Source of the DNA: Octopus bimaculoides
Lineage: Eukaryota
Length of the DNA stretch: 33,756 nucleotides
Assembly (NCBI RefSeq): GCF_001194135.2
Contig: NC_068999.1
Location: forward strand, 43,452,578-43,486,333
Direction of reading: 5' to 3'
A program made the position numbers and the translations under genes. Below the pieces are notes generated by a model that saw nothing but the letters and a program-made list of their open reading frames with translations, did not search any database and was not told where the DNA came from. Shown here piece after piece: positions 3,431-19,483 of the stretch (positions are counted from its first letter, which is position 1; each line of letters begins with the position of its first letter).

Positions 3431-4826
3431 TTTTAAAAGTGGAAGCTTTATATTATAAAACCAATAGCAGTCTGTAGCAAGAAGGCACCAAATGGTTAAA
3501 GACTTTAAATGAGAATAAATTATTAACCTGAAGACATTTCTTTTGTATTAATCCTAAGGCAGTTCTCTCTTGAAAGACTTTTAGTTCACCTGAAATTTCT
3601 CTTTTATTCTTTTTAATCCCATCAAAACTTACTCTTTTGAATAGTTTAACTTTCTGAATCTCTGCCATTCTGATACAGTAGCATAGACTTTAAGCCTCTT
3701 GGTTTACCAATTACATTTCAGATTCTGTCTAGCAGCCAAGCAGATATGTAGATTGTATTCTCAGAATCCTAATGCCCTCAGATACAGAATATACTTTGTG
3801 TGTCCTAGTTCAGCTGTTATTACCAGTCCATACTTGAAGTGTTTGACTTGTGGCTTGTTCCTTAACCATTATTTGGTTTCAGCCCTCTGTGCTTGACTGA
3901 AACCAACTGCTACCATTCTACAATAAAAGCAGCAATCACACAAAATAAACAAGGGCATTTCTATATCAGTCATGGGTAAGCTGTAGCCTATAGACGTTTC
4001 TGAATAGCCTAATGAAAAACTACTAGTAGTGTGGCTTGTCTAATCATGGGCCATATCCCATGCGGCCCTCTTGTCAACAAAACATTGCCCATGTCTTTTC
4101 TGTGTGGTCACACAATCTGCAACCAATAACAAGCAGACTTCCCTCTGATTACTCTTGTCAGGCTTTAAAAATGGCAAGAGACATTAGATTATGCAATCCT
4201 AAATACAGTATATTGGAATAAAGGGCTCGTTAATCTTTTGATCTTGGGGGGGGGGGGTTGTTTCTTTTAATTAAGGTTGACTTGAGGCTGGACACTAGCA
4301 CATGCATATGCACCCTGTTCACACTAAGCACCATCTTGGAATTCTTTCATTTTCATGACTCTAAGACTTCCATATTATTCTATTCTACACTCCTCATGCC
4401 TTTCATCTCTAACTCTTGTCCTTTCCAAGAGATTTCTTTTGCACTTCTCTCACTAGCTCTTCAATTACACTTCTTGATATTGATGATAATGATAATAATA
4501 ATAATGATGATAATAATTGCCCTTTTTATTGATAATTTGCTCCATTTCCCATTGGTCAAACTTGTGAAGAACAGCTAAGATTTTTGCTGTAATCAAAACG
4601 AAACTCTCAGATGTTTTTGGAGCTAGAAACTTGTAAGAAGTGTTCTTGCATGCTTTTTCTTGGTCCTTACCTCCATGGCAGGTACAGGACAAGCTTGAAG
4701 AATCCAAGACCAGGATTTTCGCTTCCTTTAATGTTTTGGCGAAAAAAAGAAAAAAAAACAATAATAACAGTAATAATAACAATAGTAAATAAATAAATAA
4801 ATCACAGAAAAAAAAAGCAAAATAAG

Positions 4827-5254
4827 GTCTACTATTTCTTTTCTTTTTTTTACTTTTTTTTTTCTGCTATTCCTCTCTTTCATACTTTGACCCTATCCTG
4901 TGCACTTGTACCACTACTCTGCATGTCCACCTGTGCTTCGTCTGCACTTTTATAACCACTCCTGCTGCTNNNNNNNNNNNNNNNNNNNNNNNNNNNNNNN
5001 NNNNNNNNNNNNNNNNNNNNNNNNNNNNNNNNNNNNNNNNNNNNNNNNNNNNNNNNNNNNNNNNNNNNNNNNNNNNNNNNNNNNNNNACTGCTGCTCCTG
5101 CTGCTGTCATCTACTACTACTGCTGCTGCTACCGCTGCTGCCGCCAACACCACCACCACCACTGCCACCACCACCTCTGTTGTTGACCCTTCTTGTCTTC
5201 TGAAAAAAAAAACAAAACAAAAAAAAAAACTTTCCAAATGACCACCACCCACAG
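4827..5254 (+). promoter_or_regulatory. extended AG-exclusion zone with polypyrimidine tract and CUG/YGCY cluster upstream of E1 (candidate splicing regulatory element)
   Basis: No AG in the sequenced bases 4827-4969 and 5088-5252 (308 nt; a 118-nt N gap lies between). Pyrimidine tract about 4833-4881, about 12 YGCY in 5088-5166, TGCATG at 4920-4925, branch-point-like TTGAC with A at 5186. Confidence 0.6.
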
Positions 5255-5367
5255 TGCCGATGATTGCCAACACTAACCAGCCTGCATCGATGGCAAGTGC
5301 TGCTACTAGCACCACCTCACTTCCTACTAATGCTGCTAGTGTAAATTACTTTGATGAGAACAACCAG
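5255..5367 (+). CDS. mbl: muscleblind internal coding exon E1 (113 nt, phase 1 to phase 0), Ala/Thr/Ser-rich C-terminal-region exon
   Basis: Acceptor cccacAG at 5253-5254 is the first AG after an in-frame TGA at 5239-5241. Donor CAG|GTAGTA at 5368. Translation (x)TG CCG ATG...AAC CAG = VPMIANTNQPASMASAATSTTSLPTNAASVNYFDENNQ. It resembles the recalled human MBNL1 segment [32 protein letters not shown] in start, end and phases, and splices in frame to E2. Confidence 0.85.
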
Positions 5368-5693
5368 GTAGTAGTGCTCTAAAACTCTTCTTCATCATCC
5401 TTAGTGCTACACCTGCTTCTACTACTGCTCTTTGTTTTACTAGTGTTTTATTATTATTATTGTATTGCGTGTTTGCTTTCTTCATTTCTGCTTATCTTAC
5501 TGTTTAAGTATCTTTTGGTTTCGTTTCATTCGTGTCTTGAACTTTTCTTAATCTTAAGACAAATATGATTTGTCTTTTATTTCTTTATACATGGCCAAGA
5601 TATCTGCATCACATTTTTTTTCCTTTTGTCATATATCGAACTTCTTTTAACCATATACATATCAACATACATAATTATGTGTTCACCTATGCC

Positions 5694-16315: not shown

Positions 16316-16350
16316 TTGCTGGACACCCTCCCACTGTGCCGCGATTTTAA
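16316..16350 (+). CDS. mbl: alternative reading frame of E2 (phase-1 entry): xAGHPPTVPRF*
   Basis: TT GCT GGA CAC CCT CCC ACT GTG CCG CGA TTT TAA read from the sequence. Resembles the recalled Drosophila MblC C-terminus FTGHPPGVPRF*. Would be used if E1 is skipped from a phase-1 upstream donor, which is outside the window or not identified. Confidence 0.6.
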
Positions 16351-16400
16351 GTCTAGCCAGTGTAACAGGCCACAATGTAAGTTTGTGCATCTAATGGAGG
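16316..16400 (+). CDS. mbl: muscleblind coding exon E2 (85 nt, phase 0 to phase 1), CCCH zinc finger C-X7-C-X4-C-X3-H
   Basis: Strong acceptor tttatcctttctcttccAG (16314-16315) and consensus donor G|GTAAGT (16401). Translation LLDTLPLCRDFKSSQCNRPQCKFVHLME+G, in frame with E1 and E3. Confidence 0.93.
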
Positions 16401-17214: not shown

Positions 17215-17410
17215 TTTGAACTCAGAATGTAAGAACAAATAAAAATACTGCAACGCATTTTGTTCACTGCTCTTTTGTAAATTCCTCATAAACAATTGCA
17301 AAATTTAACTTGAATCTGGAGATGTTTCTGTTGAACTTAAAACATAAAGACAGACGAAATACCGCTAAGCATTTCGCCCGGCGTGCTAACATTTCTGCCA
17401 GCTCTGTTAC
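17215..17410 (-). mobile_element. two adjacent 5' head fragments of family A SINE
   Basis: Reverse complement of GAGCTGGCAGAAATGTTAGCACGCCGGGCGAAATGCTTAGCGGTATTTCGTC, plus a second GAGTTCAAATCCC head. Confidence 0.6.
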
Positions 17411-17925
17411 TGCTGCTGTTCTGGCCTCATTCCTGCATCTCCGCCCATCTCATCTCCTTTCCTTGTCAATGCTCCTTTACCATGTGGTTTTAAGGCACCC
17501 TGCTGCTATTTCCCCACTGAGGCTTACATTTTAGTGCCACCAGACAGTCACTTTCTCAATCTTATCTGAGTTCCAGCCTCTGCATCTTATTTCGTCACTG
17601 ACCTTGTTGATGCCCATTGTTGTCTCCACTGTGTCATTTTGGACTCTGTGCAGACCGATTAATCGGAAGTGTTCCAGCCATAACCATCCAGTCTTGATAG
17701 TTTCTAGAACTATATTATCGTCTTTTAGGATGACAGGATATGTTTTAGGGATAGATTTGACTGCTTTTTCCTCTCCAGCTTCTTCAACCATCTAGCAATT
17801 CTTTCTGCTGTTGCATGGATTTAGACTCTGTGCGAACACGTGATCAGTATTGCTCAACCTATAATAGCACACGTAGTTCTCAGTGACAGATGTCCAGCAG
17901 CATGATAACCGCCAAATCTCCTGTC
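17410..17925 (-). mobile_element. decayed LINE (RTE-like) reverse transcriptase remnant
   Basis: Reverse-strand peptides YYRLSNTDHVFA (like GFR.GRSTTDHIF), KVSDEIRCRGW and CLKTTW*RSIDKE (like GRPKTTWRR.VEKE). Contains stops and large deletions. Confidence 0.45.
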
Positions 17926-19195: not shown

Positions 19196-19210
19196 ATTAT
19201 GTTGAAGTGA
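19196..19210 (+). CDS. mbl: alternative reading frame of E3 (phase-0 entry after E2 skipping): IMLK*
   Basis: ATT ATG TTG AAG TGA. An E1-E3 junction gives ...ENNQ|IMLK*, resembling recalled human MBNL2 ...TANQ|IILK*. Confidence 0.55.
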   Translation: MMLK

Positions 19211-19332
19211 CGGAGGGCAAGGTGACTGTGTGCCGTGATTCAGTTAAGGGGAAGTGCCGAAGACACCTGTGCAAATACTATCACATCCCTGTTATATTAT
19301 CAGCCCTTGCTGCTCCCAACTTGACCACTTGA
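19196..19332 (+). CDS. mbl: muscleblind probable terminal coding exon E3, CCCH zinc finger C-X7-C-X4-C-X3-H plus short tail
   Basis: T-rich acceptor ttttttttacaactttcAG (19194-19195). G|AT TAT... = DYVEVTEGKVTVCRDSVKGKCRRHLCKYYHIPVILSALAAPNLTT, TGA at 19330-19332. The inter-finger linker VEVTEGKVTVC matches the MBNL-family pattern (VEVQNGRVTAC / TVTVC..CKYFH). Confidence 0.93.
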
Positions 19333-19440
19333 GAAGCAGCAGCAGCAGCAGCAGCAGCCGACCTACTACTACTACTACTACTACAGCAACTTTCTACTAC
19401 TTCTATTACAACTACATCTGCAACCACTATTACAACTGCA

Positions 19441-19483
<43 letters not shown>

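What the first reader, a model, noticed from the sequence alone, without database searches (positions are those of the whole stretch)
4827..5254. Long AG-exclusion zone packed with CUG/YGCY before E1: candidate Mbl autoregulatory element with distant branch point
Seen: 308 sequenced nt with no AG on either side of a 118-nt gap, and both gap edges are CTG repeats. About 12 YGCY in 5088-5166 plus about 4 before the gap. Strong pyrimidine tract about 370-420 nt upstream, a second tract after TTGAC (A5186, 68 nt upstream), an Rbfox-type TGCATG at 4920, and a poor proximal tract (A-run, ACC repeats). Established: MBNL binds YGCY/CUG repeats, and human MBNL1 autoregulates an exon through sites between a distant branch point and the 3' splice site. 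Inference: the same logic acts here on the frame-setting exon, using a natural CUG tract.
Basis: partly seen in the sequence, partly recalled or inferred. Interest (0 to 1): 0.8.

Follow-up and report, generated by a model that had tools for sequence, protein, structure and literature searches.

The report
Conserved AG-free zone before octopus muscleblind exon
The stretch is the end of an intron in the octopus muscleblind gene, just before a small optional exon that decides whether an extra RNA-binding zinc-finger pair is read in frame.

Summary
The window is Octopus bimaculoides muscleblind (mbl).

**What E1 is.** E1 (5255-5367, 113 nt) is a real internal exon. Orthologues in 7 species all have a length of 2 mod 3. 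Including E1 puts a third tandem zinc finger (exons 16316-16400 and 19196-19332) in frame. Skipping it ends the protein at AGHPPTVPRF*.

**The AG-free zone.** It is 166 nt next to the acceptor, or 426 nt if the gap holds no AG. Microsatellites make such runs fairly common in this window. The orthologous acceptor nevertheless has a 92-193 nt AG-free zone in Lottia, Pomacea, Tegillarca and two spiders, and at least 121 nt in a bivalve-like transcript. Neighbouring exons have 21-97 nt.

**What is conserved.** A conserved element lies before the gap (about 4885-4950):
- a branch-point-like CTTTGAC
- CCUGUG(CA/UG)CUU
- UCUGCAUG (Rbfox-type)
- UGUGCUU, which contains the muscleblind-type motifs UGCU and GCUU

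The CTG/CAC/poly(A) block (4958-5230) has no counterpart in the other species. It looks like an insertion specific to the octopus lineage.

**Verdict.** A long-AG-exclusion-zone, probably distant-branch-point, regulated 3' splice site is well supported. Muscleblind autoregulation through the CUG tract is plausible but untested. No cephalopod mRNA containing E1 was found.

The parts
4827..5252 (+). AG-free zone upstream of the E1 acceptor: 143 nt, a 118-nt gap, then 165 nt
   Evidence: AG at 4825 and next at 5253. Orthologous zones are 92-193 nt, against 21-97 nt for control exons.
4833..4885 (+). U-rich pyrimidine tract ending in CUCUUUCAUACU
   Evidence: Direct reading and TRF. CTCTTTCAT(A/G)CT aligns with Tegillarca.
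4885..4891 (+). CTTTGAC, a YNYURAY branch-point-like site (A4890, 365 nt before E1 if the gap estimate holds)
   Evidence: TTGAC or TTAAC sits directly 5' of the CCTGTG motif in Lottia and the bivalve-like species too.
4897..4909 (+). CCTGTGCACTTGT, positional orthologue of CCUGUGUGCUU in gastropods and bivalves
   Evidence: Alignment A2 and the local alignment to Lottia.
4919..4925 (+). CTGCATG, an Rbfox-type (U)GCAUG
   Evidence: Present in 5 of 5 molluscs, 64-82 nt before E1 in the other four.
4928..4950 (+). CACCTGTGCTTCGTCTGCAC. It holds UGUGCUU (4932-4938), which contains the muscleblind-type UGCU and GCUU.
   Evidence: TGTGCT is the only non-low-complexity 6-mer shared by all 7 upstream regions. 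Such sharing occurred in 0.2% of 2000 random real-window draws. It aligns to Lottia TTTGCTTCACCTGCAC.
4958..4969 (+). Left edge of the CTG-type microsatellite
4970..5087 (.). Assembly gap (118 N, length only estimated), flanked by CTG repeats on both sides
5088..5141 (+). Imperfect (CTG)n/(CTA)n microsatellite carrying 11 of the 12 YGCY of 5088-5166 (the 12th is at 5163, in the CCA array)
   Evidence: TRF: period 3, 17 copies, 74% matches. YGCY positions. No counterpart in the other species.
5144..5179 (+). (CCA)n microsatellite
5181..5202 (+). TGTTGAC (A5186, 69 nt before E1) followed by a short pyrimidine tract. The 8-mer TTGACCCT repeats the one at 4887-4894.
5203..5229 (+). A-run (27 nt), which makes the proximal tract poor
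   Evidence: The last 40 nt are 42% pyrimidine and 10% U.
5253..5254 (+). Acceptor AG of E1
   Evidence: Homology of the exon start (TG CCG ATG..) to six orthologues.
5255..5367 (+). E1: a 113-nt (2 mod 3) frame-setting cassette exon encoding ..LPTNAASVNYFDENNQ, with donor CAG|gtagta
   Evidence: In-frame inclusion is seen in P0014, P0016, P0044 and P0022.
16316..16400 (+). Exon A: first finger of the third tandem zinc finger. In E1-skipped mRNA it is read as ..AGHPPTVPRF* (stop at 16348-16350).
19196..19332 (+). Exon B: second finger and stop codon of the E1-included frame
   Evidence: dN/dS is 0.085.

Best explanation
**What it is.** The region is the 3' end of the intron that precedes E1. 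E1 is an ancient alternative exon of muscleblind, and its length is 2 mod 3 in every species examined.

**What is shown**
- Including E1 shifts the frame so that the last two exons encode a third tandem CCCH zinc finger.
- Skipping E1 ends the protein 11 codons into the next exon.
- The acceptor of E1 is preceded by an unusually long AG-free zone in molluscs and spiders.
- The zone holds a conserved intronic element. In octopus this lies at about 4885-4950. It comprises a branch-point-like UUGAC, CCUGUG(CA/UG)CUU, UCUGCAUG, and UGUGCUU..CUGCAC.
- In octopus about 290 nt of AG-free microsatellite (CTG, CTA, CCA and an A-run, including the gap) separate this element from the acceptor. That block has no counterpart in the other species.

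**What is inferred**
- The spliceosome uses a branch point far upstream and scans to the first AG, at 5253-5254. The candidates are A4890, next to the conserved element, and A5186. Selection therefore keeps the zone free of AG even while repeats expand in it.
- The weak proximal tract and the weak donor (no G at +5) make E1 depend on regulators bound in the zone. The likeliest are Rbfox at UGCAUG and muscleblind or CELF at UGUGCUU.
- The octopus CUG tract may add muscleblind binding between a distal branch point and the acceptor, which by the MBNL rule for upstream sites would repress E1.

**My estimates for the sub-claims**

| Sub-claim | Probability |
|---|---|
| Conserved regulated 3' splice site of a frame-setting exon | 0.85 |
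| Branch point more than 60 nt upstream | 0.55 |
| Muscleblind itself is a regulator | 0.35 |
| The CUG tract is functional | 0.2 |
For: **Gene identity and frame logic**
- Cephalopod mRNA L001 and RefSeq Octopus proteins join upstream mbl exons directly to exon A and end in AGHPP(S/T)VPRF*.
- The upstream exon ends in phase 1, and 1 + 113 nt restores the frame.
- E1 is included in frame in Tegillarca P0014, Logan RNA P0016 and P0044, and Callosobruchus P0022.
- The seven E1 orthologues are 113, 101, 146, 119, 122, 86 and 71 nt, all 2 mod 3.
- The third zinc finger is under purifying selection within cephalopods: dN/dS is 0.13 overall and 0.085 in exon B, against 2.3 in frame +1.

**The AG-free zone**
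- Lengths are 426 (at least 166), 177, 193, 176, at least 121, 115 and 92 nt. Each is in the top 0.07-2% of runs in its own locus. The bivalve-like contig is too short for this comparison (5.6% of only 36 runs).
- Fisher's combined p is 8e-10. This treats the lineages as independent, which overstates the significance.
- Control exons A and B have 21-97 nt; Mann-Whitney p = 0.001.
- The next AGs upstream are closely spaced.

**Conserved motifs**
- TGTGCT is present in 7 of 7 species, TGTGCTT in 6 of 7, and CTGCATG in 5 of 5 molluscs.
- Among 2000 draws of random real windows, such sharing occurred in 0.2%, 0% and 1.35% respectively.
- Motif order is collinear with Lottia and Pomacea.
- No conserved motif was found in the downstream intron.

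**Branch points and structure**
- YNYURAY sites occur only at -365 and -69 in octopus.
- Distal sites lie near the 5' end of the zone in Lottia, Pomacea, Tegillarca and Trichonephila.
- The last 40 nt before the octopus acceptor are 10% U.
- The segment 5088-5260 is unstructured, z = +0.46.

**Literature**
- Long AG exclusion zones mark distant branch points and alternative exons. A zone caused only by a repeat is not kept in the orthologue (PMC1431707).
- MBNL specificity is YGCY plus GCUU, and upstream sites go with repression (PMC5041496).
Against: - No branch point is mapped.
- No cephalopod transcript with E1 was found. All eight cephalopod proteins or mRNAs recovered lack E1: seven end in the skipped-frame tail and one, the Argonauta model, is partial.
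- AG-free runs of this size are common in this repeat-rich window, and the + strand is generally poor in AG.
- Tegillarca has a conventional branch-point candidate at -29. Lottia and the spiders have decent proximal pyrimidine tracts, so a long AG-free zone need not mean a distal branch point everywhere.
- In Trichonephila the UGUGCU motif lies just outside the AG-free zone.
- The octopus-Lottia pairwise alignment is only moderately significant: z = 3.2, and 4% of random real windows score as well.
- The gap may hide an AG.
Confidence: 0.6

Rival explanations
1. The natural CUG/YGCY tract (4958-5166, including the gap) is a muscleblind response element lying between a distant branch point and the acceptor. 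Muscleblind protein binds it and represses, or otherwise controls, E1. The protein thereby autoregulates the ratio of isoforms with and without the third zinc-finger pair.
For: - There are 16 YGCY in the zone against about 3 expected from the window background. This is the densest cluster in the window.
- (CTG)3 occurs at only three places on the + strand of the window, two of them here.
- The tract is unstructured. From my own memory, the human MBNL1 response element is also reported as unstructured.
- If A4890 is the branch point, the tract lies between it and the acceptor.
- MBNL1 and MBL-1 do autoregulate exons of their own genes.
- The conserved UGUGCUU carries UGCU and GCUU.
Against: - The dense tract is absent from six other species, which have 1-7 YGCY, mostly near background.
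- It is an imperfect microsatellite in a genome region full of microsatellites.
- If A5186 is the branch point, the tract lies upstream of it.
- The known autoregulated exon is a different one, the KR exon.
- There are no binding or splicing data.
Confidence: 0.2
2. Neutral repeats. The CTG, CCA and poly(A) arrays are ordinary intronic microsatellites that lack AG by composition. Splicing of E1 uses A5186 or a nearer site. The long zone in octopus has no regulatory meaning beyond the conserved upstream element.
For: - There are 16 AG-free runs of 140 nt or more on the + strand, almost all microsatellites.
- Gooding et al. describe exactly such repeat-caused zones.
- The insertion is not shared with other species.
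- TGTTGAC plus a pyrimidine tract at -69 could serve as a moderately distant branch point.
Against: - The orthologous acceptors keep AG-free zones of 92-193 nt in non-repetitive sequence.
- A mononucleotide shuffle of 5088-5252 lacks AG only 0.045% of the time.
- Even A5186 is 69 nt upstream, with an A-run between it and the acceptor.
Confidence: 0.2
3. The zone is a regulatory platform for factors other than muscleblind. Rbfox would act at the conserved UGCAUG, CELF/Bruno at UGUGU, and PTB at the CU-rich tracts. These would set tissue-specific E1 use. Muscleblind would be the regulated product, not the regulator.
For: - CUGCAUG is present in 5 of 5 molluscs at 64-82 nt from the exon (335 nt in octopus).
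- CCUGUGUGCUU contains UGUGUG in Lottia, Pomacea and the bivalve-like species.
- The spider zones are CUCUCU-rich.
- Known distant-branch-point exons are often PTB targets.
Against: - UGCAUG is absent from both spiders.
- The motif shared by all species, UGUGCU, fits muscleblind at least as well.
- These factors commonly act together, so this explanation overlaps with the best one rather than excluding it.
Confidence: 0.3
4. Assembly artefact. The scaffold join across 4970-5087 is wrong or hides substantial sequence, so the 5' flank does not belong immediately upstream of E1.
For: - The gap length is only an estimate, and both edges are repeats that assemblers handle badly.
- There are 9 gaps in 33.8 kb.
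Against: - The conserved element, followed by E1, appears in the same order and orientation as in Lottia, Pomacea, Tegillarca and the bivalve-like species.
- The same repeat type sits on both edges.
Confidence: 0.07

Closest known systems
Human MBNL1 exon 5 autoregulation through intron 4 (Gates, Coonrod and Berglund 2011, JBC 286:34224). The paper is not held. The details come from my own memory; the fact of exon 5 auto-repression is cited.
   Same: - It is a muscleblind-family gene.
- The alternative exon is preceded by an AG-poor zone with a distant branch point (141 nt, from memory).
- There is a weak, non-canonical 3' end.
- A largely unstructured, conserved region with YGCY sites lies between the branch point and the acceptor.
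   Different: - The exon is different. Exon 5 is the 54-nt in-frame KR/NLS exon, whose orthologue lies upstream of this window (Lottia L014 5357-5422). E1 is 2 mod 3 and gates a zinc-finger pair.
- The dense YGCY tract here is a lineage-specific microsatellite.
- Nothing has been tested experimentally.
C. elegans mbl-1 exon 7 autoregulation (Verbeeren et al. 2023, PMC10773944)
   Same: Autoregulated alternative splicing of an invertebrate muscleblind gene that switches between protein isoform classes.
   Different: It concerns the KR-motif exon and nuclear localisation, not a frame-setting exon before a zinc-finger pair.
Human exons with long AG exclusion zones and distant branch points (Gooding et al. 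2006, PMC1431707)
   Same: - The zone is at least 150 nt.
- AGs are closely spaced further upstream.
- A branch-point-like site plus pyrimidine tract sits near the 5' end of the zone.
- The exon is alternatively spliced.
- The orthologues keep the zone.
   Different: - It is in an invertebrate.
- Part of the octopus zone is microsatellite. That paper warns that repeats alone can create a zone with no function.
- The branch point is unmapped.
Drosophila mbl isoforms with one or two tandem zinc-finger motifs (Irion 2012, PMC3315501)
   Same: Alternative splicing decides how many zinc-finger pairs the protein carries. That paper also mentions a divergent second pair in 'MblF'.
   Different: - Irion's exon 5 encodes the canonical second pair on one exon.
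- Here the pair is a further, divergent one (both fingers CX7CX4CX3H) split over two exons.
- It is brought into frame by a separate 2-mod-3 exon.
cTNT exon 5 repression by MBNL1 competing with U2AF65 (Warf et al. 2009, as summarised in PMC7404189)
   Same: Muscleblind sites in the 3' part of the upstream intron would repress the exon by blocking 3' splice-site recognition.
   Different: In cTNT the site is a stem-loop within a conventional polypyrimidine tract. Here the tract is unstructured and far from the acceptor.

Membership tests
Long-AG-exclusion-zone / distant-branch-point alternative exon (Gooding et al. 2006) | [quoted passage not shown] | tested here: met
   166 nt sequenced next to the acceptor, or 426 nt if the gap has no AG.
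Long-AG-exclusion-zone / distant-branch-point alternative exon (Gooding et al. 2006) | First zone much longer than the spacing of AGs further upstream | tested here: met
   The upstream AGs lie 430, 439 and 449 nt before the exon, so they are 9-10 nt apart. The pattern is the same in Lottia, Pomacea and the spiders.
Long-AG-exclusion-zone / distant-branch-point alternative exon (Gooding et al. 2006) | The zone is kept at the orthologous exon, so it is not merely a lineage-specific repeat | tested here: met
   177, 193, 176, at least 121, 115 and 92 nt, against 21-97 nt for exons A and B.
Long-AG-exclusion-zone / distant-branch-point alternative exon (Gooding et al. 2006) | Branch-point consensus plus pyrimidine tract towards the 5' end of the zone, and no good candidate in the last 40 nt | tested here: met
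   YNYURAY occurs only at -365 (CTTTGAC) and -69 (TGTTGAC). The last 40 nt are 42% pyrimidine and 10% U.
Long-AG-exclusion-zone / distant-branch-point alternative exon (Gooding et al. 2006) | Experimentally mapped distant branch point | not testable with these tools
   No lariat or RNA data for octopus are available.
Long-AG-exclusion-zone / distant-branch-point alternative exon (Gooding et al. 2006) | The exon is alternatively spliced | tested here: inconclusive
   Skipping is seen in cephalopods and in the bivalve-like species. Inclusion is seen in bivalves and arthropods. Inclusion in any cephalopod was not observed. It is only inferred, from a dN/dS of 0.13 for the downstream frame.
Muscleblind autoregulated exon (MBNL1 exon 5 / mbl-1 exon 7 type) | The exon belongs to a muscleblind gene | tested here: met
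   L001 mRNA, and RefSeq O. bimaculoides and O. vulgaris muscleblind proteins, run into exon A of the window.
Muscleblind autoregulated exon (MBNL1 exon 5 / mbl-1 exon 7 type) | Orthology to the KR-motif (NLS) exon | tested here: not met
   The KR exon (..GKKRPREPADD..) is a separate exon upstream (Lottia L014 5357-5422). It is not in the window.
Muscleblind autoregulated exon (MBNL1 exon 5 / mbl-1 exon 7 type) | Conserved cluster of YGCY/GCUU sites in the regulatory region | tested here: inconclusive
   Octopus has 16 against about 3 expected. The other species have 1-7, mostly near background. One UGCU/GCUU-bearing motif (UGUGCUU) is conserved.
Muscleblind autoregulated exon (MBNL1 exon 5 / mbl-1 exon 7 type) | Muscleblind binds the element and changes exon inclusion | not testable with these tools
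   Needs CLIP or a gel shift, plus a minigene or knock-down.
Rbfox-regulated exon | Conserved (U)GCAUG within about 300 nt of the exon | tested here: met
   CTGCATG is present in 5 of 5 molluscs and absent in 2 spiders. In octopus it lies 335 nt upstream because of the inserted repeats.
Canonical MBNL tandem zinc finger (ZnF1/2 or ZnF3/4) | Spacing of CX7CX6CX3H followed by CX7CX4CX3H (PMC11837677) | tested here: not met
   Exons A and B give CRDFKSSQCNRPQCKFVH and CRDSVKGKCRRHLCKYYH, both CX7CX4CX3H. Overall similarity to MBNL1 ZnF3/4 is still clear, with E = 3.5e-13.

The most novel reading that the evidence does not exclude
Octopus muscleblind pre-mRNA carries a natural CUG-repeat tract inside the AG-free zone, between a distant branch point and the acceptor of the frame-setting exon. 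If the gap is all repeat, the tract could run to about 50 units. It would act as a built-in sensor of free muscleblind protein. High muscleblind would occupy the tract and block E1, so the protein lacks the third zinc-finger pair. Low muscleblind would allow E1 and add the pair. This would be a physiological counterpart of the pathological CUG sequestration seen in myotonic dystrophy, built on top of an older Rbfox/muscleblind-responsive element shared by molluscs and spiders.
Probability: 0.15. Interest if true: 0.8.

Novelty: new member of a known kind. Interest (0 to 1): 0.55.

Why it matters
Muscleblind proteins are master regulators of alternative splicing, and their loss on CUG repeats causes myotonic dystrophy.

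The work points to an ancient switch that, as far as I could find, has not been described. A small exon, always 2 mod 3, decides whether protostome muscleblind carries an extra, divergent zinc-finger pair. Genome annotations mostly list that pair as a separate small protein. In one spider it is listed as a 'toxin'.

The switch has a conserved, unusual 3' splice-site architecture and a short conserved intronic element. Together these give concrete, testable handles: the UGCAUG and UGUGCUU motifs, and two candidate branch points.

If the octopus CUG tract is functional, it would be a natural example of CUG-repeat-based titration of muscleblind. If it is not, it shows how microsatellites can expand inside an AG exclusion zone as long as they bring in no AG.

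Tried and rejected
1. **A separate small gene.** I first took E1, A and B to be a stand-alone 109-aa zinc-finger gene starting at ATG 5260. I rejected this for three reasons. mRNAs join upstream mbl exons to exon A. Three E1 orthologues have Leu, not Met, at that position. Full in-frame proteins also exist.
2. **A tblastn error.** My first tblastn of the L001 ORF against the window used the wrong frame. I redid it. Only E1, A and B lie in the window.
3. **Closing the gap or getting another cephalopod's intron.** Exact look-ups of the E1 ORF found nothing. The O. vulgaris gene range is 178 kb, so no DNA was returned.
4. **RNA structure.** 5088-5260 folds no better than shuffles (z = +0.46). 4827-4969 folds only weakly better (z = -1.88). 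I did not pursue the possible pairing of the U-run at 4839-4867 with the A-run at 5203-5229, because the gap makes any fold unreliable.
5. **Downstream intron.** There is no shared motif and no UGCAUG.
6. **Rfam.** No family matches anywhere in the window.
7. **Literature.** Gates 2011 is not in the library. There is no paper on cephalopod muscleblind. The one search made for a third muscleblind zinc-finger pair found none, beyond the mention of 'MblF'.
8. **Second YGCY-rich spot.** The spot at 17363-17440 looked ordinary, and I did not follow it up.
Full report
**1. The observation**

- AG occurs at 4825 and not again until 5253. This gives 143 + 165 = 308 sequenced AG-free nucleotides around a 118-N gap at 4970-5087.
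- Both gap edges are CTG repeats.
- There are exactly 12 YGCY in 5088-5166 and 4 before the gap.
- TGCATG is at 4920. TTGAC with A5186 is followed by a short pyrimidine tract.
- There is a 27-nt A-run at 5203-5229, and the acceptor context is CA-rich.

As bare statistics these features are uneven.
- The YGCY cluster is the densest in the window on either strand, but it is produced by an imperfect (CTG)n microsatellite.
- AG-free runs of 140 nt or more occur 16 times on the + strand, up to 471 nt, because the window is full of microsatellites.
- The run next to the acceptor ranks 12th of 1338.

**2. What the gene and the exon are**

- The window is Octopus bimaculoides. P0001 is UniRef A0A0L8GUY8 at 100% identity.
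- Two + strand exons, 16316-16400 and 19196-19332, encode a tandem CCCH zinc finger. It is most similar to MBNL1 ZnF3/4 (E = 3.5e-13), but both fingers have CX7CX4CX3H spacing.
- A cephalopod RNA contig (L001) is a true muscleblind mRNA with the canonical first finger pair. It joins an upstream exon directly to exon A, out of frame, and stops at ..AGHPPSVPRF*.
- RefSeq muscleblind of O. bimaculoides (XP_014777742.1) and of O. vulgaris end the same way, and the tail is encoded at 16318-16347 of the window.
- The upstream exon ends in phase 1. E1 (5255-5367) is 113 nt, so including it restores the frame of the zinc fingers.
It is not the first coding exon of a small gene, as I first assumed.

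**3. E1 is ancient and real**

- A profile search found this third zinc-finger pair in ticks, insects, crustaceans, molluscs, an annelid, a nematode, rotifers, a tapeworm and a sea cucumber.
- Several proteins or transcripts carry upstream muscleblind sequence, an E1-like segment (..P.NA.SV.Y.D...Q) and the fingers in a single frame. Examples are Tegillarca P0014, Logan RNA P0016 and P0044, Callosobruchus P0022, and Nymphon and Ixodes models.
- I located E1 in six further sequences:

| Species | Locus and coordinates | Length |
|---|---|---|
| Lottia | L014 7839-7939 | 101 nt |
| Pomacea | L019 10047-10192 | 146 nt |
| Tegillarca | L018 15252-15370 | 119 nt |
| Bivalve-like RNA contig | L002 124-245 | 122 nt |
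| Trichonephila | L016 9993-10078 | 86 nt |
| Oedothorax | L017 15712-15782 | 71 nt |

- All of these, like the octopus exon, are 2 mod 3.
- In the bivalve-like species the skipped form is abundant (33 blocks of contigs), and it ends in the same alternative-frame tail.
- No cephalopod transcript containing E1 was found.
- Between O. bimaculoides and the L001 cephalopod, however, the zinc-finger frame has a dN/dS of 0.13. For exon B, which would be pure 3' UTR in the skipped mRNA, it is 0.085. The same bases read in frame +1 give 2.3.
- The fingers are therefore translated in cephalopods. That requires E1 or an equivalent frame correction.

**4. The AG-free zone is a conserved property of this acceptor**

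- Upstream of E1 the zone is 177 nt in Lottia, 193 in Pomacea, 176 in Tegillarca, at least 121 in the bivalve-like contig (the contig ends there), 115 in Trichonephila and 92 in Oedothorax.
- These zones lie in ordinary, non-repetitive sequence. In the six genomic loci each falls in the top 0.07-2% of AG-free runs of its own locus; the bivalve-like RNA contig is too short for this comparison.
- Exons A and B of the same loci have 21-97 nt, with a median of 39 against 171 for E1. Mann-Whitney p = 0.001.
- Fisher's combination of the per-locus ranks gives 8e-10. The lineages are not fully independent, so this overstates the significance.
- Further upstream, AGs are closely spaced.
- Gooding et al. 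proposed exactly this test to tell functional zones from zones caused by a lineage-specific repeat (PMC1431707). E1 passes it.

**5. What is conserved inside the zone**

- The only non-low-complexity 6-mer shared by all seven upstream regions is TGTGCT. TGTGCTT is in six of seven, and CTGCATG is in all five molluscs.
- In 2000 draws of random real windows from the same loci, such sharing occurred in 0.2%, 0% and 1.35% of draws.
- The motifs are collinear across species:

| Species | Sequence |
|---|---|
| Octopus (from 4897) | CCTGTGCACTTGTACCACTACTCTGCATGTCCACCTGTGCTTCGTCTGCACTTTT |
| Lottia | CCTGTGTGCTTGTTGCCATTTCTGCATGGCGTTTGCTTCACCTGCACATTT |
| Pomacea | CCTGTGTGCTTCACTGCATTTTCTGCATG |

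- A UUGAC or UUAAC lies directly 5' of the first motif in octopus (A4890), Lottia and the bivalve-like species.
- In the other molluscs the element sits 48-110 nt from the acceptor. In Lottia only 37 nt follow it.
- In octopus it is followed by ATAACCACTC, then the CTG repeat, the gap, more CTG/CTA, (CCA)n, a second TTGACCCT, and the A-run. That is about 290 nt with no counterpart elsewhere.
- YGCY counts in the other zones are 1-7, mostly near background.
- The downstream intron has no shared motif.
- The conserved core is therefore the part before the gap, not the CUG tract.

**6. Mechanism**

*Shown:* the frame logic, the conserved long AG-free zone, the conserved element, the weak proximal tract in octopus (10% U in the last 40 nt), and a donor lacking G at +5 in all six genomes.

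*Inferred:*
- Branch-point recognition occurs far upstream, followed by scanning to the first AG.
- YNYURAY matches in the octopus zone occur only at -365 (CTTTGAC) and -69 (TGTTGAC).
- Distal matches lie near the 5' end of the zone in Lottia (-130), Pomacea (-178 to -203), Tegillarca (-147 and -168, plus a conventional site at -29) and Trichonephila (-97).
- Selection against AG downstream of the branch point would explain why only AG-free repeats have accumulated there.
- The likely regulators are Rbfox (UGCAUG) and muscleblind and/or CELF (UGUGCUU; UGUGUG in three species).
- MBNL specificity is YGCY plus GCUU, and upstream sites correlate with repression (PMC5041496).
- The octopus CUG tract could add muscleblind binding. 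It is unstructured. It lies between branch point and acceptor only if A4890, rather than A5186, is used.

**7. Comparison with what is known**

- The architecture resembles MBNL1 intron 4 and exon 5. The details of that case are from my memory of Gates et al. 2011, which is not held. The exon 5 auto-repression itself is cited.
- It also fits the Gooding class of distant-branch-point exons.
- E1 is not the orthologue of the autoregulated KR/NLS exon, which is conserved across bilaterians (PMC10773944) and lies upstream of the window.
- Irion (PMC3315501) showed that fly mbl encodes one or two finger pairs. The pair gated by E1 is a further, divergent one.
- I found no paper on cephalopod muscleblind, and the one search I made for a third finger pair found none.

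**8. Verdict**

This is a conserved, probably distant-branch-point, regulated 3' splice site of a frame-setting muscleblind exon.
- The CUG/YGCY tract that motivated the finding was found only in octopus among the species compared, and its function is unproven.
- The main gaps are the unclosed assembly gap, the lack of any cephalopod comparison for the intron, the absence of an E1-containing cephalopod transcript, and the absence of branch-point or binding data.

Noticed in passing
window 16316-16400 and 19196-19332; proteins P0001-P0120: Exons A and B encode a third, divergent muscleblind zinc-finger pair, with both fingers CX7CX4CX3H. It is conserved from molluscs and arthropods to a nematode, rotifers, a tapeworm and a sea cucumber. 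Databases mostly list it as a separate small 'C3H1-type domain' protein (O. bimaculoides A0A0L8GUY8). In Liphistius it is listed as 'U64-Liphistoxin'.
   Followed up: partly
window 16316-16350: Exon A appears to be dual-coding. Its first 12 nt (TTGCTGGACACC) are identical from octopus to spiders. The E1-skipped frame gives a conserved tail, AGHPP(S/T)VPRF*. The stop (TAA, 16348-16350) lies 50 nt before the last exon junction, which is borderline for the 50-55-nt NMD rule.
   Followed up: partly
window 5368-5373 and orthologous donors in L014, L016, L017, L018, L019: The E1 donor lacks G at +5 in all six genomes (gtagta, gtagag, gtacag, gtaata, gtacaa, gtacgg). The donor of exon A is consensus gtaagt.
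   Followed up: no
window 19333-19480; L001 1150-1231: Directly after the stop codon of the zinc-finger frame there is a (CAG)8 run and then (CTA)n-type repeats. A similar arrangement is present in the other cephalopod's mRNA.
   Followed up: no
window 17363-17440: This is the second-densest YGCY spot on the + strand (7 per 80 nt, including a CTGCTGCTG), in the intron between exons A and B. It looks like ordinary sequence.
   Followed up: partly
L001 843-926; proteins P0123-P0133: Cephalopod mbl mRNAs carry two tandem, near-identical mini-exons or segments encoding YSSTKLNEIQPYFT between the '..PVT' exon and exon A. They were not found in the other phyla examined, nor in the sequenced part of the window.
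   Followed up: partly
P0001 (A0A0L8GUY8): The 2015 gene model starts with 'M' followed by LLDTLP.., but exon A begins TTG CTG. The origin of that Met codon, presumably an upstream exon ending in ATG, is unexplained.
   Followed up: no
whole window: There are nine assembly gaps (3726 N) and very abundant microsatellites. Long AG-free runs (140 nt or more) number 16 on the + strand, which is the transcribed strand, against 5 on the - strand.
   Followed up: partly
L002 1-123 and L003: The two RNA contigs that contain E1 in the bivalve-like species both begin in the upstream intron rather than in the preceding exon. This could mean intron retention, an unspliced precursor, or an internal start. 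They carry GACTAACAG right at the acceptor.
   Followed up: no
P0013 (Linepithema humile muscleblind isoform X13): In this ant isoform the linker after the first finger pair joins exon A directly and in frame (..GQVPTV|LLDTLPVC..). Some lineages therefore have a second, E1-independent route to the third finger pair.
   Followed up: no
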